From Octopus sinensis (lineage: Eukaryota), in contig NW_021833297.1 of the NCBI RefSeq assembly GCF_006345805.1, positions 11,559-75,558 of the forward strand: DNA of 64,000 bases, written 5' to 3'. Below are positions 9,327-64,000 of this stretch, piece by piece; within the stretch, counting starts at the first letter, position 1; every line of letters begins with the position of its first letter. The position numbers were made by a program, and so were the translations under genes. Below the pieces are notes generated by a model, which saw nothing but the letters and a program-made list of their open reading frames with translations, had not been told where the DNA came from and ran no database searches.

Positions 9327-10463
9327 ATCTTCCTTTAATTAGAGGTTGTACTTGTTATTTTACTTTCTTTTTGAGATTTGCTTGCTTTACCATCCGGGTC
9401 ATTTGCTTGAAATTGTCTCCGGGTAAACGTTTCTTTGAGATTATGAGGGAACTATTTCAAATTTCTTTTTTTCTTATGGGATACCACACGCTGATTTTAT
9501 ATATGTATCTACTTTCTAATCCATCACTAGAGTTACAGTAGAAAAGACATAATCTTGGTTTCTCTATTTGCTTATAAAACGGAACCGGAAAATACAGATT
9601 ACCCTTTCTCGAGCCAAAAAGGGCTTAGATATGTTGCTCTTCATTGAATTTATTAGCAGATGAAAGACAGTGGTTACCTCGGTGGGATATGAACTCGTAA
9701 ATTTAAGAGCTGAAACTAAATACCACAAGACATTTCTACCGACGCCTTCACGATTCTATCAATTCAACAACACCGGTTTCAAAAGAAGCAATGTAACGTC
9801 ATATCAAATTCATTTACAATTTAATCAATCCATACTAACCTACGTGCATTCAAAAATCATTTGATTACAGCACATCAAATGATCTTTGGCTGCATACATT
9901 TCACTCATATACGACTCTAAATAAACTGAAAAGGTGGCAATCTCTTATAAAAGCAAATTTTATGTTATTTCTTCTTCCTTTTACAGTCGCTATAAGAAAT
10001 ATAGTGAACCAGCCAATAACTTGCTCGTAAAAAGTAACTAGATGAACTACTGGTACGATATTGTTTCTATGCCGTTTCTGTGACCTGTCTTCTCTATGGC
10101 CAAATACCTGTAAATTGTTCTTACTTTCTTTGCAGTGTTCTGTGCTTTATCAAGACATTTAATCTTTTCTTAGGAAGTTAAGTTTCTAGTTGTTTGTGTG
10201 GAGTTGAAGCAGTTGTGGTGTTGAAGCATTAGTTTTTTGGTTGAAATTGCAGAAATTGAAGAAAAATAAAACAACAAATATCTTACAAACTATAGAATTT
10301 TCTTAATAAAGCCAAGAGAAAAAGATGTTTTATAAACATATTCTACCAGTATAGGAAGTTTAAAATTCTTTAGTTACCTAGAAATTATGTTAAAATCTGC
10401 CGTTCAAACTGAAAAGATCCTAACATTAAAAATAGATATTTTAGTGCTGCGATACCTTGATAT

Positions 10464-13030: not shown

Positions 13031-13262
13031 AAGGCGGCGAGCTGGCAGAAACGTTAGCACGCCGGGCGAAATGCTTTGCAGTATTTCATCTGCCGTTACG
13101 TTCTGAGTTCAAATTCCGCCGAGGTCGACTTTGCCTTTCATCCTTTCGGGGTGGATAAATTAAGTACCAGTTATGCACTGGGGTCGATGTAACCGGCTTA
13201 ATCACTTTGTCTGTCCTTCTTTGTCCCCTCTATGTTTAGCCCCTTGTGGCAGTAAAGAAATA
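13031..13262 (+). mobile_element. tRNA-SINE family A (GGCGGCGAGCTGGCAGAA...GAGTTCAAATTCC...AAAGAAATA)
   Basis: A/B-box head, full length. Further copies at about 7430-7652(-), 12610-12950(-), 17400-17556(-), 20880-21030(-), 28260-28400(-), 29440-29640(-), 41548-41760(-), 42975-43160(-), 43849-44060(-), 44140-44330(-), 62510-62700(-), 63718-63932(-). Confidence 0.85.
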
Positions 13263-13963: not shown

Positions 13964-14546
13964 CCATAATGTGTTGTTTTGTTATGTTTTCTTTTTCTAA
14001 CAGAGATAATATTTTTGGTACATACTTGACGCATCGGTCCAGTTCTCTGTGCCTTGAGATCAAGTGGTACTGGGGACATTTTTATTTTTGATTATTTAGA
14101 ATATCAGTCAAACGCTGAGATCCACACTCTCTCTCTCTCTCCTCTCTCTCTCCTCTCTTTCTGTCTTTCTCTCTCGTATCTATCTATCTATTTATCTGTC
14201 TATCTATATATATATCTTGCTATCGCTTTCTTTCCTTCTTTCTCTTTTTCACTCTCTATTTCTATCCTTTTCTCTTTCTCTCTGTCCTTCGCTGCTCTCT
14301 CTCTCTCTCTCTCTCTCTTTCTAACTTTCTGTGTAGTACCTGTAGCTTCAAAACTGATCCTAAAAATGTAGTGTGCCAATCTTACTCATCTCGAGAATTA
14401 CATTAAGTTTACACCTGTCTGTAGAATGGTCAACCATTTAAAACTTAATTTTACGGGCAAGAATTCTGCTAGTCAAGGAGGTTGAATGCTCATCGTTGTG
14501 TCCACCGAAAACATCACCACATTTATCATAATCATCATCATCACCA

Positions 14547-14785
14547 TCATCATCATCGTTTAACGTCCGCTTTCCATTCTAGCATGGGTTGGACGGTTCA
14601 ACTGGGGTCTGGGAAGCCAGAAGGCTGCACCAGGCCCAATCTGATCTGGCAGTGTTTCTACGGCTGGATGCCCTTCTTAATGCCAACCACTCCGTGAGTG
14701 TAGTGGGTGCTTTTTACGTGCCACCGGCACAAGTGCCAGACGAGGCTGGCAAACGGCCACGATCGGATGGTGCTTTTTACGTACT
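14547..14785 (-). mobile_element. Retroposon 3' end with (GAT)n tail
   Basis: catcatcatcgtttaacgtccgctttcc...ttctacggctggatgcccttc; simple-repeat tail on the minus strand. Clade not determined. Confidence 0.55.
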
Positions 14786-17627: not shown

Positions 17628-18154
17628 TCAACAACAAAAGGAGAAGGAGTAATAATAGTAGTATAAAGATTTATTGAAATTTTCTCAAAGCAATTATATA
17701 TTTTCGTATTATATTCACACTTTTTATAGTTTTTTGTGCTTTATTATTATTTATATATTTCTTTCTATATTTTTTCCACAAGAAATTTTTTTGTGATATA
17801 TTCTTACATGAATTTTTTTTTTCAATGCGTGTTTCTTTAATTTAGTTATTTTTTATGAGAATACGCAGTCTTTTAGATTTCTTTAAAAATCGTAGTTTTA
17901 CATTTAGATTTCTTTAAAAAATTATTTGCGTCCATTTGTATATACATATATATAATGTATATATATATATATATATTATATATATATATATTATATATAT
18001 ATGTATAAATATATTGATATTATAGAATAGTATATGAACGCTTGTATGTTCGTGTGCACATGTGTTTATATACATACGTACATACAAATATATATATGTG
18101 TGTGTATTATGTACATACAGCCATTTATTGTTTATCATTTGTGCGTAGGTGCCC

Positions 18155-18826: not shown

Positions 18827-18887
<61 letters not shown>

Positions 18888-19454
18888 ATATAAGCAAGGG
18901 CAAAAGAAAATATTTCTATGCCAATATGCTGATAACAGACTTTAAATCGTCAATTTCCACATATTATTATATACCCACTACAGAGATACGTTGTGCTGAA
19001 ATCGAGGAAAGCCAGCCAACAGAATTTTTTTTTGAAAGTTCGTTATTTCTATATTGAATCAATTTCGGAATTAATCTCATAATAGATATTTTCCTCATCA
19101 GTAGAAAATACGAATAGAATTAAATGAAATACTTACATGCGCCCATGGAAAAAAAGCCGAAGCAAAGATCATGTGTACACATAAGTACCCCAGATATATC
19201 TAAATATAAACTCCTTTTGTTAGCCTCAGCACACGTATGAACTGTTCTCCACCACAGCTTATAGTCGTTTCCAGTCCCTATAGCGAATAGTAATAAATGT
19301 ACTACTGATATAGGATGAAGTTTATTTACAGAAAAAAATTTCATCAAAAAATGTGGCAGCATATTAAAATTTTAACCTTGAAGGTATTTTAATATGCTGC
19401 CACTTTTTTGATGAAATTTATTTTTGTAAAAAAACTTCATCCTATATATATATA

Positions 19455-19500
<46 letters not shown>

Positions 19501-19596
19501 CATATATGTACACATACACATATAATTGTATTAGAAAAATATTCGAAGTATCAGCAGGATGTTTCTTTGTGAAAACTTCAGCAAAGAGATCTGTCA

Positions 19597-19898
19597 TCTT
19601 TATATATAAAACTGAAGTTGTGTGTCTGCCTGTCTCCTCCGATTTAGATTTCTAACTACTCCCACATTTTGCGGTGCAGTTTAACCAAAAGCGGGTATCT
19701 TATAGTCGTGATTCATGTCGAGCGTCTGGGTATTAGCGCGCGCCTACGATGTGTCTACGATTTAAAAAAAATTTACCATCATTTTTCCGCATTTTTAATG
19801 CATTTTTTGCTCGGTTTATATAGGGGAAGTAACTCTCTAAAAATGCTTATATAGTTATTTCCCTTACAAACCCGAGCAACGCCGGGCGATACTGCTAG
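19597..19898 (+). mobile_element. Non-autonomous Helitron family H1, copy 2 (shorter)
   Basis: a|TCTTTATATATAAAA ... cccgagcaacgccggg cgatactgCTAG|t; lacks the internal duplication present in copies 1 and 3. Confidence 0.8.
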
Positions 19899-22180
19899 TT
19901 TAGTATAAATCAGTATCAGAGCAATAATATATCCTGTGAAATGACGAACAAAACGACACATGAAAAATATAAATACCTGTACACTGTACAGTAACAGTAC
20001 CGTTTTTATAGCCATTGGCGTTATCAAGGATTGAAACTGGAATCAATAAATAACAATCCCAGTATTGTTTTTTTGTATACGTAAATCCTTACAATAAAAA
20101 CACCTAATCTGCTATAGCAGTTTTTCTTTAATCCAATATTTGCACCGTAATTATTTATAGCTTCATCTACTTCGAGTTCCATCATAATAACAACCACCGA
20201 TTTATGAAGAAATTATATATTTTATAAACGCTGCTAGGATATTAGTGACAGGAATTAATATTGCAAAATTATTAAGAAAATGTTTTTGTGTAACGTTTAA
20301 CGATGTTCTAAATGAAATTGAATAAATCAACTGATTTTCAAATATAACTTTCAAGTAAAAACAACGATAATTGTTGTGATTGCTGAAATTTTCCTCTTGA
20401 CCAACCAACCATATGTAGTGAATGAGTATTTAATTTTAGTAGGGAAGTTGTTCATTTAAAACTGGTTGTTCTGTGTCGAGAATGTTCTATGATTAAATAG
20501 CAAACCGATCAATGAGTTGAATATATTTTAATAACTGATGTAGGGAGAAAGTGTAGTATTTGTAAGATATTTCAGAGTTTCTGACGTTGATGAAAGACAC
20601 GGGGCCTCCGTCGGTCAACGCTGATCATACTTTTGCTCATGTATTCGCAAGCCTGGGTAATTTATATTTGTATTTATTTATTTATTTATCAGGAAGGCAA
20701 TCAGTACTTCATGCATGAAAGTATTTTTTTTCCGCATTAATCCCTGCTTATCTAAAGAAAAATCCGCTGAGTTCGGTCCATATAACTAGAAACTAATATC
20801 GCTCGAGTTGCTGCTGAGAGAATATAAGGACTTAGAACAGATCCCGCAAGGTATCTCTCTCGGCTCTCTAACAGTTTCGCTAATCCAACGCTCTGGATTG
20901 GTACTTATTGTCGATCCCGAAAAAGTAAAATGTACAGTGAACTTGGTATGATTTGAACTTAGATCCCAGAGAGCCGGAATAAATACTGCGAAACATTCTA
21001 ACCAATACTCTAACGACTCTGCCAGTTCGCCAGGACGAGATGAAATTATGTTTAAATTGGATGATGGCTCGATTGCTCATAACATAGTGGACTCTACTAC
21101 AGGTAACCCTAAGAACAGATACTGGTGTTAGACTGGCGTCCGATTAGGTCTTCATTTCAAGCATAATAGCGAGTTTGTCAAATGGTGTTTGAGCGCTGTT
21201 ATCAGCATTTCGAGCAACGGAAGTACTATCATTAGAAGTGAAGTGTCATTTTAAAAGAACTCAATATCAACAAAATGAACAGTTAAGAGTTTGATAAAAG
21301 AGATTTTACCGCACTGGGGGTTTAAATGAGAGAGACCAGAGTTGATGGATTAGAGAATTGGTTGAGAGACTAGATTGTATTGTGTTAGATGAGAAAAATT
21401 AGGCTTAATGAGAGAGTTAATTGAGAGCGAGTTAAATTCAGCCCTTACATCTCGAGAAAATGCATTAAGGTTTTCTCGTGAATTTATGGTTGTTTTTTTA
21501 AAAATAAATTAGGAAGTTTAGGGAAGAAATTTTCATTGCAATTTTCAACTACTGAAGTAACTGCATAGAAGTTCGTTCATTCATTCTGTAGTCTTCATTT
21601 TAAAACAAACAGGGACTTGACTGTAACTCGCAACATGATAAATGATACACGGATGCAACTTCAGTGCCCTATTTGGATCTCATTAAAAAAATGCAAGGAG
21701 CTTAATTAGTGAAATGTAATGGCTCATTGAAAGAACATTGCTTTCTGATGCGTTTATGCTCCGAATTTTAGAGGGGTTATGCTGCTGTTTGTTGTCGACC
21801 GATGAAAATGAAGTCCTCGCTCTAGCTTTTTCTCTCTCTCAATCTTGAGAGAGAGGAGGAGGGAGAAATAGGTGGAGAGAGAGAGAGAGAGCGGATTGTT
21901 TTATTCAGTAGATTGAATGATTCAGACTCTCACATGCTGAATGAAATAGTTTTCAGTCACATGATTAAATAGATTACAGGATAAAAATAACAATATTCGA
22001 TATTGAATGTTTTATTTTTTCTATGTTATGTTAATGCTTTTTTTTTCATAGCGTGACCCCCAGCATGGTATAACCTCTAGCTCAAATAAGAATTGCAAAG
22101 CGGAAGTATATTGATAGGACCTCGCAATTAAATCATTTGTGTTATGTAGTTAAGTCCTTTTTACACCCTGAGTTCAAATA

Positions 22181-40864: not shown

Positions 40865-41165
40865 GTTCCTTCTCGAGTCATGCCTGGCTCATAAGGGCCG
40901 GTTTCCCGGTTTCCTTGGCGTATAGGTTCCCCCCACCTGGACGGGACGCCGGTCCGTCGCAGGTGAGCTGCAAGTTGCAGGAGGAAAGAGTGAGAGAAAG
41001 TTGTGGCGAAAAAGTCAGCAGAAGTTTCGCCATTACCTTCTGCCGGAGCCGCGTGGAGCTTAGTTGTTTCGCTCTAAAACACATACATCACCCGGTCTGA
41101 GATTCGAACCCACGATTCCTCGACTGCGAATCCGCTGCTCTAACCACTAGGCCATATTCCTCCAC
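40865..41165 (-). mobile_element. Family C-head SINE with alternative tail 2
   Basis: Shares head and acaactttctctcactc body, then a cgtcccgtccaggtgggg...gaaaccggg tail ending in (CAA)n; similar tail at about 7840-7935. Confidence 0.7.
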
Positions 41166-41490
41166 CAGAAAGAAAAGTGGAGAGCAATAGTTTATGTCCA
41201 TGCACAGGATTGGTGCTTTAGTGATCTACCCGAAGTTTCTGTGTAGCCACGTTTTCAGTTATCGTAGGTATTCTAACTCATAATTTTCAACCACTACCAA
41301 CGGCGGGCCGTTTGGCATTTGAGCGTATTCTTTGACGATCACTGCTTTCATTTCATTTACCGCTCTCGATTTTTGCAGGGTAAGCCAATAGTTGTTAAAG
41401 AAATGAAAACAGATATCGAATAGGAATGAAGCCAAATACAAATTGGGAGAATACGTGTTATTTGCGATTCCTCTTTTGAGCAGTGTGATG

Positions 41491-41539
<49 letters not shown>

Positions 41540-42170
41540 TGATGATGATTTCAAATTTTTGCCACAAGGGCTGATTGGGCGAAGGGTTTAACTTGATTAC
41601 ATCGACGCTGGTTCGTAACGGTGCTTATTGAATAAGTACCCCGAAAGGATGGAAAGCAAGGTCGACTTCGGCGGAATTTGAACTCAGAATATGCAGGCGG
41701 ACAAAATATCGCTAAGCATTTTGTCCGGTATGCTAACAATCCTACAAATTTGCTGTCTTAATGAAGCTTAAATATATCCTAATATATAAACTGGTACTTT
41801 GACATTTACTAGGGCAATCAACGGAACAGCCTGCTCGATAAAAAATTAACGTGCAACTGGCTGATAATTCTACAGATACGCGTTCCATTCACATAGTTCT
41901 CAGGGAGATTCAGCATGACACTGACATACTGACAAGGCTGGCCCTTTGAAATACAGATACGACTCGATTTTACCAGCTGAGTGGTCTGAAGCAACGTGAA
42001 ATAGAATGTCTTACGCAAGGATACAACGCGCTGTTGGGAGTCGAACTCGTGAATCGGCTACTCTAACCACAAAGCCACGCGCCTTCACTGTATTGTCTAC
42101 GCTATTCATATACATACCACCAGCCTCTCCTAGTCATTTCTTTCAGGTCATTTCATTTTAAGGTGTCCTT

Positions 42171-42208
<38 letters not shown>

Positions 42209-42578
42209 TGTGTGTGTGCGTGTATGTGTGTGTGTGCGTTAGCGTGTGTGTGTGTGTGTGTGCTTTAAAAATGTATTTTTCTTTATTTCAATAATTTGCA
42301 GGCGAGAAACTGAGTCGATATCATCGACCACAAAATTTGATTTTCTTTATTTTATCGAACCAGAAATATTGAAAGAAATTTGCGTAGGCCTCTGAGCAGT
42401 TATCACCTTGACAACTTTCTCTGTCCTGGTCAATACGACGATCACACGCTACACACCTTCTTCCAAGCACCGCTTTAAACGGCAGCAATTTGAACTCAAT
42501 TTGAACTCGGTGCAATTTGAACTCAAAATCTAAGGATTCGGAATAAATATCCTGAAGCAATTTTACGACGCTCTAGTG

Positions 42579-42798
42579 CAGTGCTTTTCAAACTTTTTGC
42601 TGGAGCGGAAACCCCAAGGAAACATTCCACTGGCTCGAGGAACCCCTGTGTAATAATTTAATTGTCTTATGCAAATATATCTGCACAGGAGAATTAAAAA
42701 TTACTGCCGATTTTAGCAGTTTTGTAACTTCTTGCGGAACCCCTGGACAGTACTGGCGGAACCCTAATGTTCAGCGGAACCCTGGTTGAAAACCACTG
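42579..42798. mobile_element. hAT (Charlie-like) MITE
   Basis: TIRs CAGTGCTTTTCAA.. / ..TTGAAAACCACTG with an exact 8-bp TSD CTCTAGTG (42571-42578, 42799-42806). Confidence 0.88.
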
Positions 42799-43354
42799 CT
42801 CTAGTGACTCATTGTGCTTCCTGTCTTCATATACTAGCACTTTGCATGGTGGATTGTATCATTCATATCGACTTTTCTCCTAACACAGCCATAATCCAAT
42901 ATTTGAAACCGTATTAAAAATAATAGAAAAATCATAACTAAATAATACTTCCAGATGTTGACACAAGACCAGCAACTTCGGAGTAGGAGATAAGTTGATT
43001 ACATCGACAATAGTACTCAACTGGTACTTATTTAATTAACCCCGAAAATATGAAAAGTAAAGTCAACCTTGGCGGAATATGAATTCAGAATAGAGCGACG
43101 GCGAAATGGCGCTAAACACTTTACCCTGCGCAAAAACGATTCTGTCAACTCGCCGCCTTATAAATTATAGTAGAATAATAAAAACAAAGACCATATTTGT
43201 TTAACGGCTTTATTTCATTCCGTGTCTACCTTTTCTTTAAAGATATGCATGTTTATTGATTTTCTTTATATCTTCTTTGTATCCCAAGCACCAGATGAGA
43301 GCGACTGTAGAAACACGGTAGTCTGCGTTAAAGAGAGGTCGCTTCATGTAACGT

Positions 43355-43656
43355 TCAGGAATAAAAGCGATCCATGCTACCACCTAGAAAAGAATTATGG
43401 AAGTTGCTGCCCAACGTTCCTCCATTGGCTTGGGCCAAAGCGATTCTCTGCGACTTCACACCTTCTCCCAGCATTTTATAGGAATTCGCCATCATCATGT
43501 ACGCTTTGAATTGATTGTACATAGATTTAGTCAGCAGTTCTTCTAGCATTTTCTTCTTGTTGTCATTTTTCGAGTCGGATTTTCCGCCATGTCCGCGATC
43601 CATACCGCTACGCCAAAAAGAATCTGGTCCATCGTTGTTCCATCTTTTGTCACCGT
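43355..43656 (-). CDS. Terminal coding exon, copy A (distal): (D)GDKRWNNDGPDSFWRSGMDRGHGGKSDSKNDNKKKMLEELLTKSMYNQFKAYMMMANSYKMLGEGVKSQRIALAQANGGTLGSNFHNSFLGGSMDRFYS*
   Basis: Same acceptor context (AG at 43658-43657), phase 1, open frame to TGA. Own AATAAA at 43257-43252 and 43214-43209. Differs from copy B only by substitutions and one 3-nt indel; 127 aa if joined to exon 1. Confidence 0.72.
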
Positions 43657-44080
43657 CTGTTAAATTTTATTGAAAAATACAATAATAATAATAATAATAA
43701 TAATTATAATAATAATAATAATAATAATAATGACAATAATAACAATAATAATAATAACAATAATAATAATAATAATAATAATAATATTGATGATGATCAT
43801 GATGATCATGATAATAAAATAATAATAATAATAATATAATAATAACGATTTCAAATTTTGGCCACAAGGGCTGATTGGTGGAAGGGATTAACTTGATTAC
43901 ATCGATGCTGGTTCGTTACGGTACTTATTGAATAAGTACCCCGAAAGGATGGAAAGCAAGGTCGACTTCGGCGGAATTTGAACTCAGAATACGCAGGCGG
44001 ACAAAATATCGCTAAGCATTTTGCCCGGTATGCTAACGATCCTATCAATTTGCTGTCTTAATAACAACAACAACAACAAC

Positions 44081-44137
<57 letters not shown>

Positions 44138-44512
44138 CCTTTTTACTAAAAGCACAATTTCTGAAATTTGGTAGAAGAGGACTAGTCTATTATATTGACC
44201 CCAGCGTTTCACTAGTATTTAATTTTTCGACCCTGAAAAGGTGTAAGGCAAAATCGACTTTGGTGTAATTTGAACTCAGAAAGTAGCGACGGGCGAAATG
44301 CCGGGAAATATTCTACCGACTCACCACCTTATAAATTAAATTTAAATAATAAAAACAAAGAGCATGAATATTTAACGGTTTTATTTCATTCCGTTTCTAC
44401 TTTTACTTTATAGATATGTATGTTTATTGATTTTCTTTACATCTTCCTTATATCCCAATCGACTACTGAAACACATTAGTCTGTGTCACAGGAATATGTC
44501 TTCATGTAACGT

Positions 44513-44811
44513 TTAGGAATAAAAGCGATCCATGCTACCACCTAGAAAAGAATTATGGAAGTTTCCGCCTAACGTTCCTCCATTGGCTTGGGCCAAAGCG
44601 ATTCTCTGCAACTTCACACTTTCTCCCAGCATTTTATAGGAATTCGCCATCATCATGTACGCTTTGAATTGAGCGTACATAGATTTAGTCAGCAGTTCTA
44701 GCATTTTCCTTTTATGGTAACTTTTCGATTCGGATTTTCTGCCGTGGTCACGGTCCATATCACTATGCCAAAAAGAACCTGGTCCATCGTTGTTCCATCT
44801 TTTGTCACCAT
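44513..44811 (-). CDS. Terminal coding exon, copy B (proximal): (D)GDKRWNNDGPGSFWHSDMDRDHGRKSESKSYHKRKMLELLTKSMYAQFKAYMMMANSYKMLGESVKLQRIALAQANGGTLGGNFHNSFLGGSMDRFYS*
   Basis: aatttaacAG acceptor at 44813-44812, phase 1, open frame to TAA. AATAAA signals at 44428-44423 and 44385-44380 followed by a GT/T-rich tract. Splicing to exon 1 gives 126 aa. Confidence 0.8.
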
Positions 44812-44838
44812 CTGTTAAATTTAATAATAATAATAATC

Positions 44839-44910
<72 letters not shown>

Positions 44911-44912
<2 letters not shown>

Positions 44913-45370
44913 GAGTGAGAGAGCAGTTCATGCCATCAAAGTGACACTGGGGTAAAATATACCAAGCCCAGTATACCCATCATGACTACCTGTCTGATAA
45001 GGGTACACTAGGCACTTGCATCACAACCATATGTGCGCGACATGGTGCTCTCATATCAAGATAAACAGCACATGACCTTGCAGGTGGGGCCCAGTTAGAA
45101 TTTTCTTCTGGTCAAGTAACCCATTCCGCTCAAAAGGTCCTTGAATAAGGGTGGTTTAAGGATGTTGAACGAAACACCCATGTTTCCAGAGGTGAATTAT
45201 TCAAACCCCAAAGAACCCATCTCAACACATGCCATGATGCTCCCCCACTACTTCTGCTCGTGATCAGAGATGCACATATCATCAGCCACTAAGGGACATG
45301 TTCAACTGGTTAAGGCCAAACAACTGACAAGCAAATCTGTGGTATTGAGCAGAATATTTACTGTAGCCCT
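44911..45370 (-). mobile_element. Second, 5'-truncated copy of the (TAA)n-embedded retroposon
   Basis: Colinear with 37890-38350; (TTA)n on both sides. Confidence 0.75.
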
Positions 45371-45380
45371 ATTATCATTA

Positions 45381-45434
<54 letters not shown>

Positions 45435-45570
45435 ATAATAATAATAATATAATGATAATAATATTAAAGGTGAAAAATTGAATAATAATTTGATTAATAT
45501 CAATTTAAAACCAGTGGTGTAGCATATAGAAAATTCTGAAGATTCACAAAAATTATATTACATACATATA

Positions 45571-45782
45571 AGGTGAATGACCTGTAAGTGGACATCCATT
45601 ACGCTAGAAGAAGATCCGCTTTGGCCTTACCACAAAGAAAGGAATGTTCTCAAGAAAATTTAGCAAATGCCTTCTAGCGTTTGGTATATTTTCTTGAGAA
45701 CATTCTTTTCTTAGTGGTAAGACCATAGGGGGTCGACGGTCGACTTCTAGCATATGGATGTCCATATAGTGGTCATCCCTCT
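45571..45782. mobile_element. Fold-back/MITE-like palindromic element
   Basis: Long imperfect arms (e.g. ggacatccattacgctagaag / cttctagcatatggatgtcc; cttaccac..gttctcaagaaaat / attttcttgagaac..gtggtaag), flanked by TA. Confidence 0.6.
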
Positions 45783-46003
45783 TATATATATGTATAGGGG
45801 GAATTCACGAAAAACAAAAGACGAAGACAGGTGTTATAGAAAACAAATAGATGTATTAGTATAACGCTCAGGAATTGAAAAAAGTCTTTAACGTTTCGAG
45901 CCTACGCTCTCCCACAGAAAGTAACAATGAGAGAAACAAAGAGACAAAAAATGTGGGTAGTGGCTACCGATCTATCATGGCGAATATATATATATACATA
46001 CAT

Positions 46004-46653: not shown

Positions 46654-49600
46654 GTTCGTCCTTCGGTTCGAAGATGACCAACTGACATCATCTGATGGAA
46701 CTGCCGCCATGAGACCGGAGGTGGCTGGTGAGGCCAATCCGGGCAAGGAAGCCCCTCCCACAGGTGGGGCAGAAGTGGGTAGGGGCCGTGCTACTGGTGC
46801 AGGCGGCTCTGGCTTTACGCATCTGACGTTTCTGCTCCGCTGACCGAATCCGTCCCTCCTCGGCTGTCCCTGCTCCCACGGTGATTGCGCTGCGCCAGGA
46901 TGAGCGGTTGGCAGCAAGTGTCTCCCAGGTCTCTGTTCCGATGGAGAAGTCTTTGAGAGAGACCTTGAGACTATCCTTGTAGCGCTTCTTCTGCCCTCTG
47001 ACTTTGCGCCTGCCCTGGCCGAGTTCACCGTAGAAGAGCTGTTTTGGGATGCGAGTGTCGGACATGCGGGAGACGTGGCCCGCCCATCTCAGCTGGGCCT
47101 TGCGCATGATTGTGATGGTGCTAGGGAGATCTGCCTGCTTCAGAACTTCCGTGTCTGGGACTTTGTCCTGCCAGCGGATGTGAAGGAGGTTCCGAAGACA
47201 CCTGAGATGGAAGTGGTTTATCTGGCGCTCGTGCCTTCGGTAAGCAGTCCACGTCTCGCAGCCGTATAGTAGGGTGGTAAGCACGACTACCCGGTAGACT
47301 TTCAGCTTGGTGTTGAGGCTGATTCCTCTCCGCTCCCAGACTTTCTTTCGCAGTCTCCCAAACGCGCTGCTTGCCTTGGAGATTCTGTTGGTGGTTTCAG
47401 CATCTATGTTGGCATTGCAGGAGAGAGTGCTGCCCAGGTAGGTGAAGTTTTCCACCACTCGTAGGATCCGTCCGTTCACCCTTATCTGAGGCTCATGGTA
47501 TTGTTTGTCGGGGGCTGGCTGAAACATCACTTCGGTTTTCTTGGCACTGATGGTGAGACCGAAGTTGTCACAGGCTGATGAGAACCTGTCCATCTCGAGC
47601 TGCATCTCCTGCTCATCGATTGCATTAAGGGCGCAGTCGTCAGCAAAGAGAAAGTCTCTGACGACTGTCTCCCTCACCTTTGTGACAGCCTGCAATCTTC
47701 TGGAGTTGAAAAGTTTCCCGTCTGTCCTGTACTTGATGTCGATACCGGACTTGCAGTCCCTAAAGGCGTCGGACAGCATTGCCGAGAACATGATGCTGAA
47801 CAGTGTTGGGGCCAGGACACAGCCCTGCCTGACTCCGTTGGTCACCTGGAAGGCTTCAGATGAGTTGCCGTCTTCAAGGACTCTGGCTGTCATTCCGTCG
47901 TGGAACTGGCGGACAATTGCAATAAATTTGCTGGGGCAACCAAATTTTCCCATGACCTTCCATAGTCCCTCCCGACTGACTGTATCAAAGGCCTTGGTGA
48001 GGTCAACAAAGGTCATGCAGAGGTCAAGGTGCTGCTCCATGCATTTCTCTGGAGCTGGCGAGCGGCGAATATCATGTCAGTGGTCCCTCGACCCGCGCGA
48101 AGCCACACTGGCTCTCAGGGAGAAGGTCTTGCTCCAAGTGTTCCAGAAGGCGGTCAAGCAGGACCCGGGCCAGATCTTGCCTGCTATGGACAAGAGGGAG
48201 ATACCTCGGTGGTTGTCGCAGGACTGCCGATCTCCTTTCCGCTTATAAATGTGGACGATTGTTGCGTCCCGTAAATCTTGAGGGAGTTGTTCCCTGTCCC
48301 ACATCGACTGGAACAGGCTGGTGAGCTGACTGATCATGGTGGGGCCGCCCGACTTGAACACCTCTGCAGGGATGGCGTCAGAGCCTGGAGCTTTGCCGGT
48401 GGACATTTTTTTGATGGCTCTGCTCACTTCCTCGACTGCAGGGGGAACAGCCAACTCGTGGTCTGTCGGCACCTTGGGGAGTCGTGCGATGGCTTCCTCG
48501 TTGATCTGGGCTGGTCGGTTGAGCACGATGTTGAAATGCTCCGCCCATCTCTCCAGAATCAGCCTCTTGTTAGTCAGGAGTGAGGTTCCATCCGAGCTGA
48601 GCAGGGGGGTTGATCCAAAGGAGAACTGCGGTCCATAGACAGCTTTCAGCGCCTCGTAGAATTTCTTGGTGTCGTGTTTGTCTGCGTATCCCTGAATCTC
48701 ATCCGCCTTGGCGCTTAACCATGCGTCTTGCATGAGGCGGAGTTTAGCCTGGACTGTGCTGCGAATGTTGTTGAAAGCAGCCTTCTTTGCCGTGCAGGTG
48801 GTGTCATTTTGGTGAGCCCGCAGCAGACGGCGTTTCTCTTCCAGGAGCTTTTGGATTTCCTGGTCGTTTTCGTCGAACCAGTCCTGGTGGTTCCTCGTAA
48901 CTTGGCCCAGAGTTTCAAGGGCGATGAATGAACCGTGTCCCTGAATGATTCCCACTGCTCATCGATGCTGGACTGGTCACTCCGAATGTCCAACAGCTTG
49001 CTGTCCATACGTGACTGGAGATCTTGTGCAGTCAGCTGGTTCTTTAATTTCGTGATGTTAAGCTTCCTCGTCACTTTCTGACCCTGTGGTCTTCTCTTAG
49101 GTCGGATGTAGAAATCCATCCTGGAGATGATGAGCGATGGTCCGTCCAGCAGTCAGCTCCGCACATGGCTTTGACCAGTCTCACGTCCCGCCTGTCTTTC
49201 GCCCTGACGATGACGTAATCTATCAGATGCCAGTGTTTGGAGCGTGGATGCATCCATGATGTCTTGTTGCGTGTTGGCAGACGGAACAAGGTGTTGGCGA
49301 TGGTAAGATCATGAGAGGCACACGCACGCAGGATTAGCTGCCCGTTGCTGTTGCACTTTCCGATTCCTTGCTTTCCCAGTACGCGATGCCAGGCTTGGTG
49401 GTCAGTCCCGACACGGGCGTTAAAATCCCCAAGGAGGATGAGAACCTGTCCTTAACTTCTTCAGGGTTGGTCATGGTGGGGGCGTAAGCACTGATGATGG
49501 TCGCACTAGTCTTGTTTCCAAGTGGGAGCTGCATCTTCATCAGCCGATCGTTGATACCCTCGGGGGGGGGCTTTCCAGTTTACGCACGTGTACTGACTTA

Positions 49601-50558
49601 ATGGCAAAACCAACACCAGCCTCACGACGCTCTTCGCTGCTGCGACCACTCCAAAAGAAAGTGTAGCCGCCGCCTGTCTCTGTCAGCTGGCCTTTGTCCG
49701 CAAGGCGGGTCTCGCTCAGTGCTGCAATATCGACATTGTATCGGCTCAGTTCTCTGGCCACCAGGGCAGTTCGTCTCTCTGGTCTGTCCGCTTTGGTGTT
49801 GTCAAGCAGAGTTCTCACGTTCCAAGTTGCGAAAGTGAGCACCTTTGTTTGTTTTCTTCTTTCTTTGTTTCGACCGCTTGGAAAGGATCCCCGCCAGCCG
49901 CGGTTTGCTGACCAGGGTGAGGTGAGGCAGGCTATGTTTAGGGCAACCTTTTCTAGCCCCGTCCTCATGCTGGGGAGGCGAGCAGAGCGATCCTGAAGAG
50001 GGCTGCTCGGTCACTCAGGAGGCTGCCGGACTCCACTGCTGCCTCAGTTCAGTGAGGGGCGACCACATGTCCTGAGCCGCCTGTGTGTGGGTTCATGACT
50101 GCAGCTCCCAGTGTATCCTCACCTGCTACTTCGCCGTTTCCCCATCGCCACAGGACTTTGGGATGGTGTCATGACGTCATGATGTCGTGACATGCGTGTG
50201 AATTGGATTATAGTGAGGGTGACTTGCGAAGGATCAGCCTCACTCTCTCGTCCTGGTGCGCCGGATCCAGTGGCAAGACAAAGTCAAGACGACTGGGGGT
50301 AGACCAAGATGCAGGAGCTGCCGGAAGGTGGCACGCATGGCGCAATCCAACCTCCTTAGGGGCTCCACTCCGGATTTTGACTCGTGAGAGAGTTCCTCTG
50401 CCCTTTGACAGGTTTTGTTTTTAGTCCTGCTGGGTGTCCAAATCACCCTCCTCACCAAGAAATCTTGGTGGGGTTGCCAGTTTAGTCGCCAACGACCCGA
50501 CCATGTAATAGGTTGTACTGGGTTACATGTTACCAGTAGCTCCAAGCGGAGACCTGAC
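46654..50558 (-). mobile_element. Near-full-length RTE-clade (BovB-like) LINE, disrupted, intronic
   Basis: APE endonuclease motifs ([33 protein letters not shown]), RT (FVDLTKAFDTV, GVRQGCVLAPTLF, FLFADD), C-terminal [18 protein letters not shown]. About 590 bp 5'UTR. ORF is split by several frameshifts and an apparent deletion near 49440; flanked by (CATA)n. Confidence 0.95.
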
Positions 50559-51488: not shown

Positions 51489-51610
51489 GTGTATGTATAT
51501 AACTATAGATATATATGTATGTATGTATGTATGTATTTATGTTTGCATGTATGTACATGTAAGCATATTGATACATCCTAACGCACATACAAACGGGAAA
51601 TATAACTTAC

Positions 51611-51692
51611 CGTATCCCCCTAAGAAGTCGAATGCTTCAGATGTCAGCACAGACGCAGCTAGAAAGCAGAACACAATGCTTAACGAGTTCAT
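51611..51692 (-). CDS. Coding exon 1 of an unnamed secreted peptide-precursor-like gene (signal peptide + FDFLGGY)
   Basis: ATG at 51692-51690; 27 codons MNSLSIVFCFLAASVLTSEAFDFLGGY plus 1 nt, then GTAAGT donor (51610). Hydrophobic core and S-E-A (-3/-1) cleavage pattern; TATA box about 75 nt upstream; phase-1 donor matches the acceptors at 44811/43656/63586. Confidence 0.85.
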
Positions 51693-51732
51693 ACTGAGAG
51701 CAGTGTTGATTGTATTCGAACCAATGGACGAA

Positions 51733-51890
51733 TGATGGATAACGATGCGATTATAACTGTATTTATAATAGTTACGCAATAATAGTTAGATTAAACAATA
51801 TTAGCAGGTAATTCCTGCTAGACAAAATATAGATATGATAATATATGCAGGAGATTAATCTCGGACAGGTGAGTCAACAAAGCAGATGGT
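51733..51890 (-). promoter_or_regulatory. Core promoter of the secreted-precursor gene
   Basis: TATAAATA (51767-51760) lies about 31-34 nt upstream of an Inr-like CCATCATTC (51738-51730). Nearby: palindrome TAGCAGG-taatt-CCTGCTA (51802-51820), palindrome GAGATTAATCTC (51851-51862), CAGGTG overlapping TGAGTCA (51866-51876) and CAGATG (51883-51888). Confidence 0.6.
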
Positions 51891-61106: not shown

Positions 61107-62129
61107 CAAAATAAGAGGACCAAATATCGTTAAGCATTTTGCCCGGTATACTAACGATCCTACCAATTTGCGGTCTTAATAAAACTTAAATATATCCTAA
61201 TATATAAACTGGTACTTTGTCATTTACTAGGGCAATCAACGGAACAACTTGCTCGAAAAACAAATTAACTTGCAAGTGGCTGATAATTCTACAGATACGC
61301 GTTCCATTCACATAGTTCCCAGGGAGATTCAGCATGACACGGACATACTGACAAGGCTGGCCCTTTGAAATACAGATACGACTGGATTTTACCAGCTGAG
61401 TGGTCTGAAGCAACGTGAAATAGGGTGTCTTACGCCAGGATACAACGCGCTGTTGGGAGTCGAACTCGTGATCTTGTGATCCTGAATCGGCTATTCTTAC
61501 CTCTTAGCCACGCGCCTTCACTGTATTGTCTACGCTATTCATATACATACCACCAGCCTCTCCTAGTCATATCTTTCAGCTCGTTTCTTTTTAAGGTGTC
61601 CTTCATATGTGTGCGTGTATGTATGTGTGCGTGTGCGTGTGGGTGTGGGTGTGGGTGTGCGTGTGTCTGGGTGTGTGTGCATGTGTGTGTGTGCGCGTTT
61701 GTGCGTGTTTGTGTGTGTGTGTATGTGCGTGTATGTGTGTCCGTGTATGTGTGTGTGCGTATATGTATGTGTGTGTGTGCGCGCGCGCGTGTGCGTGTGT
61801 GTGTGTGTGTGTGCTTTAAAAATGTATTTTTCTTTATTTCAATAATTTGCAGGTGAAAAAGTGAGTCGATATCATCGACCACAAAATTTGATTTTCTTTA
61901 TTTTATCGAACCAGAGATGTCAAAAGGAATTTGCGTAGGCGTCTGAGCAGTTATCACCTTGACAACTTTTTCTGCCCTGGTCAAGACGACGATCACACGC
62001 TACACACCTTCCTTCTAAGCGCTGCCTTAAACGGCAGCAATTTGAAATCAATTTGAACTCGGTGCAATTTTACTGAAAATCTAAAGATTCGGAATAAATA
62101 TCCTGAAGCAATTTTACGACGCTCTAGTG

Positions 62130-62341
62130 CAGTGCTTTTCCAACTTTTTGCTGGAGTGGAACCCCAAGGAAACATTCCACTGGCTCGAGGAACCCCATTT
62201 AATTGTCTTATGCACAAATATATGCACAGGAGAATTAAAAATTACTGCCGATTTTAGCAGTTTTGTAACTTCTTGCGGAACACCTGGCACAGTACTGGAT
62301 GAAACCCTAAGGTTCCGTGGAACCCTGGTTGAAAACCACTG
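62130..62341. mobile_element. hAT MITE, paralogous copy in the duplicated block
   Basis: Same TIRs and the same TSD CTCTAGTG (62122-62129, 62342-62349). Confidence 0.88.
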
Positions 62342-62717
62342 CTCTAGTGACTCATTGTGCTTGCTGCCTTCATGTACTAGCACTTTGCATGGTGGATTGT
62401 ACCGTTCATATCGACTTTTCTCCTAACACAGCCATAATCCAATATTTGAAACCGTATTAAAAATAATAGAAAAATCATAACTAAATAATACTTCCAGATG
62501 TTGACACAAGGCCAGCAACTTCCAAGTAGGAGATAAGTTGATTACATCGACAACAGTACTCAACTGGTTCTTATCTTATTAACCCCGAAAATATGAAAAG
62601 TAAAGTCAACCTTGGCGGAATATGAATTCAGAATAGAGCGACGGCGAAATGGCGCTAAACACTTTACTCTGCGCAAAAACGATTCTGTCAACTCGCCGCC
62701 TTATAAATTATTGTATA

Positions 62718-63103
62718 CTAGCAGTATCGCCCGGCGTTGCTCGGGTTTGTAAGGGAAATAACTATATAAGCATTTTTAGAGTTATAGCCAAAAAAATCCA
62801 TTAAAAATGGAAAAAAAAATATATATAAAATTTTTTTTAATCTTTGACTCATCGTAGACATTTTTAGAGAGTTACTTCCCTTATATAATAGCAAAAAAAT
62901 GCATTAAAATGGGAAAAAATGATGGTAAATTATTTTTTAAATCGTAGACTCATCGTAGACGCGCGCTAATACCCAGAAAGGCTCGATATGAATCACGACT
63001 ATAAGATACCCGGTTTTCGTTAAACTGCACCGCAAAATGTGGGAGTAGTTAGGAATCTAAATCGTAGGAGACAGGCGCACAACCTTACTTTTATATATAA
63101 AGA
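62718..63103 (-). mobile_element. Non-autonomous Helitron family H1, copy 3
   Basis: Same termini as copies 1 and 2; absent from the paralogous site at about 43160-43180. Confidence 0.85.
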
Positions 63104-63283
63104 TAATAAAAACAAAGACCATATTTGTTTAACGGCTTTATTTCATTCCGTGTCTACTTTTTCTTTAAAGATATGTATGTTATTGATTTTCTTTATATCT
63201 TCTTTGTATCCCAGCACCAGATGAGAGACTGACTTAGAACACGGTAGTCTGCGTTAAAGAGAGGTCGTCGCTTCATGTAACGT

Positions 63284-63586
63284 TCAGGATAAAAGCGATC
63301 CATGCTACCAACTAGTAGAAAAGAATTATGGAAGTTGCCGCCTAACGTTCCTCATTGGCTGGGGCCCAAAGCCATCTCTGCAACTTCACCACTTCTCCCA
63401 GCATTTTATAGGAATTCGCCATCATCATGTACGCTTTGAATTGAGCGTACATAGATTTAGTCAGCATTTTCCTCTAGCATTTTTTCTTCTGGTCATTTTT
63501 CGAATCGGATTTTCCGCCATGTCCGGGATCCATACCGTTACGCCAAAAAGAATCTGGTCCATCGTTGTTCCATCTTTTGTCACCGT
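63284..63586 (-). pseudogene. Terminal exon copy C, frameshifted as written (pseudo-exon or sequencing indels)
   Basis: Homologous to copies A/B with intact acceptor (63588-63587). A -1 indel in the A-run near 63480 gives TAG, and several further 1-3 nt indels occur at 63310-63395. Any partner first exon would lie beyond 64000. Confidence 0.7.
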
Positions 63587-63613
63587 CTGTTAAATTTTAT
63601 TGAAAAATACAAT

Positions 63614-63650
<37 letters not shown>

Positions 63651-63949
63651 TAATAGTAATAATAATAATAATAATAAAATAATAATAATAATAATAATAT
63701 AATAATAATGATAATAATGTTTTCAAATTTTGGCCACAAGGGTTGATTGGGGGAAGGGATTAACTTGATTACATCGATGCTGGTTCGTAACGGTGCTTAT
63801 TGAATAAGTGCCCCGAAAGGATGGAAAGCAACATAAATCGACGAGGCGGAATTTGAACTTAGAATATGCAGGCGGGCAAAATATCGCTAAGCATTTGGCC
63901 CTATGCTAACGATCCTACGAATTGCTGTCTTAATAACAACAACAACAAA

Positions 63950-63980
<31 letters not shown>

Positions 63981-64000
63981 TAATAATAATAATAATAATA

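What the first reader, a model, noticed from the sequence alone, without database searches (positions are those of the whole stretch)
43200..44813. One first exon, two intact tandem terminal exons: possible alternative-last-exon diversification
Copies A and B are about 1.15 kb apart. Each has its own acceptor, open frame, stop and poly(A) signals. Between them lie only (AAT)n and two SINEs, with no second signal-peptide exon or promoter visible. The coding parts differ by substitutions and one in-frame 3-nt indel, even the stop is swapped synonymously (TGA/TAA), while the 3'UTRs carry non-triplet indels; this pattern suggests both are maintained. I count about 14 amino-acid changes, mostly between the KR site and the second basic cluster. 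If both splice to exon 1, one promoter makes two variant precursors by poly(A)/acceptor competition.
Basis: partly seen in the sequence, partly recalled or inferred. Interest (0 to 1): 0.78.

Follow-up and report, generated by a model that had tools for sequence, protein, structure and literature searches.

The report
Octopus gene with duplicated alternative last exons
A small octopus-specific secreted-protein gene has one first exon and two tandemly duplicated, intact last exons, the layout already annotated as two isoforms in a sister species, so this is a real but fairly ordinary case of alternative last exons made by exon duplication.

Summary
The window is Octopus sinensis contig VCDQ01002531.1. 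It carries the two-exon minus-strand gene LOC115230163.

- **Exon 1:** it occurs once in the window, about 51740-51611. It has a TATA box, a signal peptide and a GTAAGT donor.
- **Terminal exons:** B (proximal, 44811-~44360) and A (distal, 43656-~43190) are homologous. Each has its own AG acceptor, open frame, stop codon and two AATAAA signals.
- **Differences:** A and B differ by 14 amino-acid substitutions and one codon indel. Only SINE-like repeats and microsatellites lie between them.
- **Conservation:** the arrangement, spacer included, is colinear in O. vulgaris and O. bimaculoides.
- **Annotation:** RefSeq lists exon1+proximal and exon1+distal as isoforms X2 and X1 of O. bimaculoides LOC106884277. 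In O. sinensis and O. vulgaris only exon1+A is annotated. Use of B in this species is therefore inferred, not shown.
- **Selection:** B is under purifying selection (omega about 0.3-0.4). A evolves close to neutrally (about 0.75-0.9).

It lies upstream of exon 1 at the contig end and is frameshifted. It probably belongs to a tandemly duplicated upstream gene.

The protein family is restricted to octopods and has no known function. I rate this a new member of a known kind, of modest interest.

The parts
51760..51767 (-). TATA box (TATAAATA) of the single promoter, about 25-30 nt upstream of the inferred transcription start
   Evidence: Read directly. The promoter block is conserved in O. vulgaris and O. 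bimaculoides. The O. vulgaris model and the cDNA L006 start at 51740 and 51718.
51611..51740 (-). Exon 1: about 48 nt of 5'UTR, then ATG at 51692-51690. It encodes the signal peptide MNSLSIVFCFLAASVLTSEA followed by FDFLGGY and the first base of a split Asp codon. The donor GTAAGT starts at 51610 (phase-1 intron).
   Evidence: tblastn gives 100% identity to residues 1-27 of XP_029656235.1, and this is the only significant hit in the window.
46688..49968 (-). LINE-type retrotransposon remnant (endonuclease and reverse-transcriptase ORFs) inside intron 1. It accounts for most of the extra intron length compared with O. bimaculoides (6.8 kb against 2.86 kb).
   Evidence: ORFs of 450, 292, 134 and 142 aa with RT-like sequence. 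The element is present at 97.9% identity in O. vulgaris. Family naming is from inspection only.
44822..44915 (-). (AAU)n/(AUU)n inverted microsatellite that folds into a long hairpin ending about 11 nt upstream of B's acceptor
   Evidence: RNAfold gives -70 kcal/mol for the 201-nt upstream piece in O. sinensis. The hairpin is also present in O. vulgaris and absent in O. bimaculoides.
44360..44811 (-). Terminal exon B (proximal). CDS 44811-44513 encodes 98 codons plus the split codon and ends in TAA. AATAAA signals are at 44428-44423 and 44385-44380, followed by a GT/T-rich downstream element. With exon 1 it would give a 126-aa precursor.
   Evidence: The exon is intact in O. vulgaris (without the 3-nt deletion) and in O. 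bimaculoides, where it is isoform X2. Omega is 0.43 against its ortholog.
43657..44359 (-). Spacer between B's poly(A) site and A's acceptor: SINE-like repeat 44140-44335, (AAC)n/(AAT)n 44060-44137, SINE-like repeat 43850-44060, and (AAT)n 43670-43840. It contains no exon-1-like sequence.
   Evidence: It is colinear end to end with the O. bimaculoides spacer at 84.6% identity.
43190..43656 (-). Terminal exon A (distal). CDS 43656-43355 ends in TGA. AATAAA signals are at 43257-43252 and 43214-43209. With exon 1 it gives the annotated 127-aa protein XP_029656235.1.
   Evidence: 100% match to P0001 residues 28-127.
42945..43172 (-). SINE-like repeat directly 3' of exon A. It is paralogous to the SINE directly 3' of exon B (44140-44335) and so is part of the roughly 1.15-kb duplication unit.
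   Evidence: Self-blast 43020-43720 against 44211-44871 gives 80.5% identity.
63103..63586 (-). Copy C: a third terminal-exon copy, closest to A, with about nine small indels that break the frame. It lies about 11.4 kb upstream of exon 1 and 414 bp from the contig end.
61117..64000 (-). Segment colinear with 41699-44129 (A and its flanks), interrupted by a roughly 390-bp repeat insertion at 62716-63105. The junction at about 61116/61117 lies inside a truncated SINE. I infer it is the start of a second tandem copy of the whole gene, with a period of about 19.4 kb.
   Evidence: The junction is also present in O. vulgaris (L005 1-704 matches 61414-60692). The window end is the contig end.

Best explanation
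This is O. sinensis LOC115230163. It is a two-exon, minus-strand gene for a small secreted protein found only in octopods. The protein has a signal peptide, a short FDFLGGYDGD-KR segment, a variable charged linker, and a conserved Met-rich helical C-terminal domain.

**History.** A segment of about 1.15 kb, holding the whole terminal exon and the SINE on its 3' side, was duplicated in tandem. This happened after the split from Argonauta and before the O. sinensis/O. bimaculoides split.

**Mechanism.** The single exon-1 donor (phase 1) now faces two equivalent terminal exons. Each has an AG acceptor, a stop codon and its own poly(A) signals. Splicing to proximal B with cleavage at B's site, or skipping B to splice to distal A, gives two mutually exclusive mRNAs. 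These encode precursors of 126 and 127 aa. They share residues 1-38 and differ at 14 positions plus one codon, mostly in the linker.

**What is shown**
- the anatomy of the locus;
- its conservation in three species;
- the exon1-to-A gene model in O. sinensis and O. vulgaris;
- both models in O. bimaculoides;
- purifying selection on B.

**What is inferred**
- that B is actually used in O. sinensis;
- that the choice is regulated by competition between the two acceptor and poly(A) pairs.

In O. sinensis and O. vulgaris, B's acceptor has lost 4 nt of the T-tract and sits next to a long AAU/AUU hairpin. This may bias usage toward A.
For: 1. There is one exon 1 and no other exon-1 or promoter-like sequence in the window.
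2. Both terminal exons have an acceptor, an open frame, a stop and two AATAAA signals. The split codon G|AC or G|AT gives Asp in both.
3. P0001 (XP_029656235.1) equals exon 1 plus A at 100% identity, so the model splices across B.
4. O. bimaculoides has the same layout. Exon 1 is at 10001-10081, the proximal exon at 12943-13242 and the distal exon at 14010-14309 in L001. Two annotated 127-aa isoforms share exon 1. No N-run lies between the two exons.
5. The spacer is colinear between O. sinensis and O. bimaculoides. The 3'UTR and flank tree groups A with the distal copy and B with the proximal copy. The duplication therefore predates the species split, and all six copies are intact.
6. The CDS is more conserved than the UTR and flanks between the paralogs (91.6% against 82% and 81%).
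7. For B, omega is 0.43 (bootstrap P = 0.025). The B-clade branch sum is 13.5 synonymous to 16.5 nonsynonymous changes, omega about 0.29.
8. A rough neutral expectation for staying intact is about 0.08 for the A clade and about 0.04 for the B clade.
9. A spliced cDNA of a close paralog (L006) shows that this exon-1-to-terminal-exon junction and the second AATAAA region are used in vivo.
10. The Argonauta hians ortholog has the same two-exon structure, with a single intact terminal exon of this kind within the 10 kb of flank sequence examined.
Against: - No transcript, protein model or database entry joins exon 1 to B in O. sinensis or O. vulgaris.
- The RefSeq and ENA annotations of these two species list only the A form.
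- In O. sinensis, B has lost one codon of the otherwise invariant LEE(L/M)LTK motif.
- In O. sinensis and O. vulgaris, B has a shortened T-tract and a hairpin at its acceptor.
- A's omega (0.75 pairwise, about 0.9 summed over branches) is not different from 1. Selection on A's coding sequence is therefore not demonstrated.
- I could not inspect the RNA-seq support behind the O. bimaculoides X1/X2 models. That RefSeq isoforms need transcript support rests on my knowledge of the NCBI pipeline, not on a test here.
Confidence: 0.65

Rival explanations
1. In O. sinensis and O. vulgaris only the distal exon A is used. B is a silent or nearly silent exon copy on its way to decay, kept intact so far by recency, by gene conversion from A, or by chance.
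For: Only exon1+A is annotated in both species, and the exon1+B protein is absent from the protein collection. B's acceptor lost 4 nt of the T-tract and abuts a -70 kcal/mol hairpin in these two species only. O. sinensis B lost a codon in a conserved motif. Synonymous divergence between A and B drops tenfold in the C-terminal half (pS 0.038 against 0.355), which is compatible with a gene-conversion tract.
Against: Of the two lineages, B is the better conserved (omega about 0.3-0.4). It is intact in three species. Its poly(A) signals and downstream element are conserved. Its ortholog is an annotated isoform in O. bimaculoides.
Confidence: 0.22
2. A and B are terminal exons of two separate transcription units. 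One of them has its own unrecognised promoter and first exon, so this would be a tandem gene pair rather than alternative last exons.
For: The family does duplicate whole genes. Copy C with a variant exon 1 (L006) and the degenerate second gene copy in Argonauta show this.
Against: The 700-nt spacer consists of two SINE-like repeats and microsatellites. It holds no exon-1-like or promoter-like sequence in any of three species. Both exons start in phase 1 with a split codon and cannot start translation of a secreted protein on their own. Gene models in three species join the single exon 1 to A or to the distal copy across B.
Confidence: 0.05
3. The tandem copies are an assembly artefact, such as two haplotypes or mis-joined reads placed in tandem.
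For: The contig is a 75.6-kb unplaced contig that ends inside a duplicated segment. Its last 900 bp show an abnormal excess of small indels.
Against: The A/B pair, with the same spacer, is present in three independent assemblies of three species, two of them at chromosome scale. A and B differ by 15% over the unit, far above the divergence expected between alleles.
Confidence: 0.01

Closest known systems
Octopus bimaculoides LOC106884277, isoforms X1 (XP_014791054.1) and X2 (XP_014791055.1)
   Same: It is the positional ortholog. It has the identical two-exon plan, the same phase-1 junction and two tandem terminal exons 1,067 bp apart with the same SINE and microsatellite spacer. Both exon1+terminal-exon products are annotated.
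   Different: Intron 1 is 2.86 kb instead of 6.8 kb, because the LINE is absent. There is no AAU/AUU hairpin at the proximal acceptor. No C-type copy lies within 10 kb upstream. In O. sinensis only the distal isoform is annotated.
Tandemly duplicated, mutually exclusive terminal exons, for example Drosophila pipe, and the 3' variable regions of PGRP-LC (reviewed in PMC9013439)
   Same: Homologous terminal exons arranged in tandem. Each has its own 3' splice site and 3' end, and each is joined to common upstream exons so that one and only one is used.
   Different: pipe has eight clusters encoding enzyme-domain variants. Here there are two copies that encode nearly the whole mature protein. The competing RNA structures shown for PGRP-LC are not demonstrated here.
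Drosophila hydra: recurrently duplicated alternative first exons flanked by the DINE-1 transposon (PMC9013439)
   Same: Exon-level tandem duplication in which an interspersed repeat directly flanks each exon copy. Here a SINE-like repeat sits directly 3' of A, B and C.
   Different: In hydra the first exons are duplicated. Here the last exons are. The Argonauta paralog P0007 does show a duplicated first exon.
Calcitonin/CGRP (CALCA) type alternative last exons in peptide-hormone genes (from established knowledge, not tested here)
   Same: A secreted-peptide precursor gene in which shared 5' exons encoding the signal peptide are joined to one of two terminal coding exons, chosen by competition between 3' splice site and poly(A) site pairs.
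   Different: The CALCA alternative exons are not homologous duplicates and encode unrelated peptides. Here the two exons are 85% identical paralogs, and the prohormone nature of the protein is unproven.
Tandem duplicated exon substitutions (mutually exclusive internal exons; PMC9741552, PMC8373072)
   Same: Isoforms that are identical except for a homologous region supplied by one of two tandem exon duplicates.
   Different: Those are internal exons chosen by splicing alone. Here the choice also involves polyadenylation, and most of the protein is swapped.

Membership tests
Alternative last exons created by tandem exon duplication | Two or more homologous exons adjacent in tandem on the same strand | tested here: met
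   A and B are 84.8% identical over 552 nt, 1,155 bp apart, and both on the minus strand.
Alternative last exons created by tandem exon duplication | Each copy has its own 3' splice site, in-frame stop and poly(A) signal | tested here: met
   Both have TTTAACAG|A acceptors in the same phase. The stops are TGA and TAA. Each has two AATAAA signals and a GT/T-rich downstream element, conserved across species. This is sequence-level evidence only.
Alternative last exons created by tandem exon duplication | A single shared upstream exon and promoter, with no first exon between the copies | tested here: met
   There is one exon-1 hit in 64 kb. The spacer holds only repeats, and the same is true in O. 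vulgaris and O. bimaculoides.
Alternative last exons created by tandem exon duplication | Transcripts joining the shared exon to each of the alternative exons | tested here: inconclusive
   Exon1+A is a RefSeq or ENA model in O. sinensis and O. vulgaris. Both forms are annotated in O. bimaculoides. Exon1+B is not found for O. sinensis or O. vulgaris. Raw RNA-seq data cannot be reached with these tools.
Alternative last exons created by tandem exon duplication | Both copies kept by selection | tested here: inconclusive
   B: omega 0.43 (P = 0.025), and 0.29 summed over its clade. A: omega 0.75-0.9, not significant. A is nevertheless intact in three species, with a rough neutral probability of about 0.08.
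Neuropeptide or prohormone precursor | N-terminal signal peptide | tested here: met
   MNSLSIVFCFLAASVLTSEA|FD has a 13-residue hydrophobic core, with S and A at positions -3 and -1. It is conserved in Octopus and Argonauta. This was judged by inspection; no predictor was run.
Neuropeptide or prohormone precursor | Conserved basic cleavage sites flanking a conserved short peptide, often with a Gly amidation donor | tested here: not met
   KR (KK in the Argonauta ortholog) and KKK/KRK sites exist. However, the segment between them is the most variable part of the protein (pN/pS about 0.8). No Gly precedes the basic sites. FLGGY is deleted in O. vulgaris exon 1. The conserved part is a 60-aa helical C-terminal domain.
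Neuropeptide or prohormone precursor | Homology to a described peptide family | tested here: not met
   There are no Pfam hits and no significant PDB hits. Only uncharacterised octopod proteins appear among 1.84 billion representatives and in the 5.8-billion-sequence search. No paper contains the peptide strings or the gene IDs.

The most novel reading that the evidence does not exclude
An undescribed octopod-only family of small secreted proteins may diversify its products mainly by duplicating single exons next to interspersed repeats. In Octopus the terminal exon is duplicated, and in an Argonauta paralog the first exon is. Whole-gene tandem copies and gene conversion add a further layer. 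In this reading, the distal exon A (omega about 0.9, with four replacements in the otherwise frozen helical domain) evolves under diversifying rather than relaxed selection. One promoter would then produce two functionally distinct secreted ligands, and a lineage-specific AAU/AUU hairpin at the proximal acceptor would tune their ratio.
Probability: 0.2. Interest if true: 0.5.

Novelty: new member of a known kind. Interest (0 to 1): 0.3.

Why it matters
If both exons are used, this is a clean, young and evolutionarily dated example of how a tandem duplication of about 1 kb, flanked by a SINE, turns a two-exon gene into a two-product gene without duplicating its promoter. It occurs in a lineage-restricted secreted-protein family of unknown function.

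It has practical value for cephalopod annotation:
- B is an unannotated coding exon in O. sinensis and O. vulgaris.
- An upstream paralog appears to be missing from the O. sinensis assembly.

The mechanism itself, alternative last exons arising from tandem exon duplication, is well known, and the two isoforms are already in RefSeq for O. bimaculoides. The conceptual gain is therefore modest.

Tried and rejected
- **Pfam scan of both exon products:** no family.
- **PDB sequence search with the family profile:** only chance-level hits, E at least 0.36.
- **AlphaFold2 with a 5-sequence alignment:** mean pLDDT 47, pTM 0.24, with one long helix at residues 56-104. The model was too poor for a fold search, so none was run.
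- **Rfam on 41000-46000:** nothing.
- **ARAGORN on the SINE region:** no tRNA-like gene.
- **Literature searches** for the LOC and XP identifiers, for SRR11869390, and for four diagnostic peptide strings: zero papers.
- **Spliced exon1/terminal-exon junction** (degenerate 33-mer) searched in genome contigs and metagenome contigs: zero hits.
- **Exact look-up** of the hypothetical exon1+B protein and of the internal-Met ORFs of A and B: not in the collection.
- **Assembly artefact:** rejected, because three assemblies agree.
- **Hidden first exon in the spacer:** rejected; the spacer holds only repeats and is colinear across species.
- **Reflectin-like (Met-rich, MD motifs):** considered from memory only and dropped. 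The protein has a signal peptide and no database similarity supports the idea.
- **CDS-only NJ tree:** poorly resolved, probably because of conversion or homogenisation. Orthology therefore rests on position, flanks and the 3'UTR tree.
Full report
**Identity of the window.** The window is 100% identical over 28,338 bp to Octopus sinensis assembly GCA_006345805.1, contig VCDQ01002531.1 (75,558 bp). Window position w equals contig position w+11,558, so window base 64000 is the last base of the contig. The feature reads on the minus strand.

**Check of the observation.**
- Copy A (distal) starts after the acceptor AG at 43658-43657 and runs in frame to TGA at 43357-43355.
- Copy B (proximal) starts after AG at 44813-44812 and runs to TAA at 44515-44513.
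- Both begin with two bases (AC or AT) that complete a split codon, so the preceding intron is phase 1.
- Both carry two AATAAA hexamers (A: 43257-43252 and 43214-43209; B: 44428-44423 and 44385-44380), followed by a GT/T-rich stretch.
- The two units are 84.8% identical over 552 nt.
- By region, the CDS is 91.6% identical with one 3-nt gap. The 3'UTR is 82.1% identical with one 13-nt gap. The downstream flank is 80.7% identical.
- The proteins differ by 14 substitutions and one missing codon. Ten of the substitutions fall in residues 39-62.
- The spacer holds (AAT)n and (AAC)n runs and two dispersed SINE-like repeats, with 14 and 7 other copies of at least 100 nt in the window.

**The rest of the gene.** A protein search with exon A returned four clusters.
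- P0001 is O. sinensis XP_029656235.1 (LOC115230163, 127 aa). Its residues 28-127 are exon A at 100% identity.
- Its first 27 residues (MNSLSIVFCFLAASVLTSEAFDFLGGY) map once in the window, at 51692-51612. The exon's last base, 51611, starts the split codon, and a GTAAGT donor follows it.
- A TATAAATA box lies at 51767-51760.
- No other exon-1-like or promoter-like sequence exists in the 64 kb, at protein or DNA level.
- The annotated transcript therefore splices from exon 1 across B to A. The intron is 7,954 nt to A and would be 6,799 nt to B.
- Intron 1 contains a LINE remnant with endonuclease and RT ORFs at 46688-49968.

**Comparative evidence.**
- P0002 and P0003 are O. bimaculoides LOC106884277 isoforms X2 and X1. 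Both are 127 aa, have the same first 27 residues, and have different last exons.
- In the O. bimaculoides chromosome (L001), exon 1 is at 10001-10081, the X2 exon at 12943-13242 and the X1 exon at 14010-14309. None of the N-runs in L001 lies between the two terminal exons.
- O. vulgaris (L005) has intact B (17721-18020, without the 3-nt deletion) and intact A (18872-19171). Its only model, CAI9732541.1, uses A.
- The whole stretch from B's stop to A's acceptor is colinear between O. sinensis and O. bimaculoides (753 columns, 84.6% identity), SINEs included.
- A neighbour-joining tree of the 3'UTR and flank groups A with the distal copy and B with the proximal copy.
- The duplication therefore predates the split of these species.
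- The Argonauta hians ortholog (P0010, L007) has the same two-exon, phase-1 structure and a single intact terminal exon within 10 kb of flank. The duplication is therefore younger than the Octopus/Argonauta split, unless a copy was lost there.

**Selection (Nei-Gojobori).**
- sinB against bimProx: dS 0.162, dN 0.069, omega 0.43, bootstrap P(dN >= dS) = 0.025.
- sinA against bimDist: dS 0.121, dN 0.091, omega 0.75, P = 0.31.
- Parsimony counts over branches give 13.5 synonymous and 16.5 nonsynonymous changes in the B clade (omega about 0.29). The A clade has 8 and 30 (omega about 0.9).
- The stem of the sinensis/vulgaris A lineage includes four replacements in the otherwise invariant helical domain: A75N, S93G, L96S and G111S.
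- By segment, the linker evolves nearly neutrally in both copies. The C-terminal domain is strongly constrained over longer distances (pN/pS 0.2-0.35 against the outgroup contig L003, P down to 6e-6).
- Between sinA and sinB, synonymous divergence is 0.355 in the 5' third and only 0.038 in the 3' two-thirds. This suggests a gene-conversion tract in this lineage. In O. bimaculoides the values are 0.30 and 0.23.
- A rough neutral simulation gives probabilities of staying intact of about 0.08 for the A clade and about 0.04 for the B clade.
- In sum, B is demonstrably maintained. A is expressed, but selection on its coding sequence is not demonstrable.

**Third copy and a probable second gene.**
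- Copy C (63586-63103, minus strand) is 92.7% identical to A but has about nine small indels, several of them adjacent -1/+1 pairs.
- It sits in a segment (61117-64000) colinear with 41699-44129. A 390-bp repeat insertion at 62716-63105 interrupts this segment.
- The junction at about 61116/61117 falls inside a truncated SINE next to an (AT)n run. The junction is also present in O. vulgaris.
- C lies upstream of exon 1 and so cannot be a terminal exon of this gene.
- A 557-nt contig in a Campylobacter fetus assembly (L006; protein MBK3487724.1) is a spliced octopus cDNA. It has the same 5'UTR, an exon 1 with I6V and D22N, and an intact terminal exon.
- That exon's 5' half carries C-specific sites. 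Its 3' half matches O. vulgaris A.
- I infer that the whole unit of about 19.4 kb is tandemly duplicated in the sinensis/vulgaris lineage. The contig breaks inside the second copy. C's frameshifts may be consensus errors: the ratio of gap openings to mismatches is 0.53 in the last 900 bp, against 0.15 in the adjacent block and 0.06 for A against B. This last point is not proven.

**What the protein is.**
- There are no Pfam hits and no PDB hits. The structure model has low confidence and shows one long helix at residues 56-104.
- A profile search of 1.84 billion representatives and a second word-indexed search found only octopod proteins:
  - the Argonauta ortholog P0010;
  - an Argonauta paralog, P0007;
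  - a second Octopus paralog, P0008/P0011, which is misleadingly named 'transmembrane protein DDB_G0274347-like'.
- The invariant core is [LV]E.(L/M/T)(L/I)T(K/R)..Y..F.AY..MA..Y..LG..V.
- Prohormone features are incomplete. The signal peptide and basic sites are present. However, the inter-site segment is the most variable part, there is no amidation Gly, and FLGGY is deleted in O. vulgaris exon 1.
- I call it a small secreted octopod-specific protein of unknown function.

**Mechanism and its limits.**
- The layout is the classical one for alternative last exons. One donor faces two complete terminal exons. Terminal-exon definition at B competes with skipping to A.
- Tandemly duplicated, mutually exclusive terminal exons are documented, for example in Drosophila pipe and PGRP-LC (PMC9013439).
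- In O. sinensis and O. vulgaris, but not in O. bimaculoides, B's acceptor lost 4 nt of the T-run. It is also preceded by an (AAU)n/(AUU)n hairpin.
- This could explain why only A is annotated in these two species. It is speculation.
- Direct evidence for exon1-B transcripts in O. sinensis could not be obtained.

**Verdict.** The architecture and its conservation are solid, and the orthologous locus is already annotated with both isoforms. Use of B in this species and selection on A remain open. This is a new member of a known kind, and interest is modest.

Noticed in passing
window 63103-63586 (minus strand), within 61117-64000: A third terminal-exon copy, C, closest to A (92.7% identity). 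It is frameshifted by about nine small indels and lies upstream of exon 1, 414 bp from the contig end. The segment is colinear with 41699-44129. The junction at about 61116/61117 suggests a tandem duplication of the whole gene with a period of about 19.4 kb. The second copy would run off the contig.
   Followed up: partly
L006 (GCA_016612875.1, JAENPS010000051.1, 557 nt): A contig in a Campylobacter fetus subsp. venerealis assembly, annotated as hypothetical protein MBK3487724.1, is a spliced octopus cDNA contaminant. It holds the 5'UTR, an exon-1 variant and a C-type terminal exon. It gives in vivo evidence for the splice junction and for an intact C-type paralog.
   Followed up: partly
window 46688-49968 (minus strand): A LINE-type retrotransposon remnant in intron 1, with endonuclease and reverse-transcriptase ORFs of 142 to 450 aa, in the same orientation as the gene. 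It is shared with O. vulgaris and absent from the much shorter O. bimaculoides intron.
   Followed up: partly
window 44822-44915: A perfect (AAT)n/(ATT)n inverted microsatellite that would form a long RNA hairpin ending about 11 nt before B's acceptor. It is present in O. sinensis and O. vulgaris. In O. bimaculoides the site holds (TCT)n followed by (ATT)n instead.
   Followed up: partly
L005 about 10100-10130 (O. vulgaris exon 1), compared with window 51627-51613: O. vulgaris exon 1 has a 15-nt in-frame deletion that removes FLGGY from the segment after the signal peptide. This N-terminal peptide is therefore dispensable in one species.
   Followed up: no
window 43355-43560 compared with 44513-44715: Synonymous divergence between A and B is ten times lower in the C-terminal two-thirds (0.038) than in the N-terminal third (0.355). 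The 3'UTR is again diverged. This is probably a gene-conversion tract in the sinensis/vulgaris lineage.
   Followed up: partly
L008 10043-10129 and 10416-10502 (Argonauta hians paralog P0007): The first exon and about 45 bp of upstream sequence are tandemly duplicated with a period of 373 bp. Both copies are intact and have GTAAGA donors. This mirrors the Octopus terminal-exon duplication.
   Followed up: no
L007 13253-13340 and about 14440-14640 (Argonauta hians): Downstream of the Argonauta ortholog lies a degenerate second gene copy. Its exon-1-like piece has GTG instead of ATG and an early stop. Its terminal-exon-like ORF is very divergent, about 30% identical.
   Followed up: no
window 62716-63105; also 731-1128 and 19596-19908: A dispersed repeat of about 390 bp is inserted in the 3' flank of copy C, relative to A's flank. 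Two other copies in the window are 87-90% identical to it.
   Followed up: no
window 44668-44670 region (B: ATGCT---AGAACTG): The one-codon deletion in B, which removes one E of the conserved LEEL motif, is specific to the O. sinensis assembly. O. vulgaris B still has the codon.
   Followed up: yes
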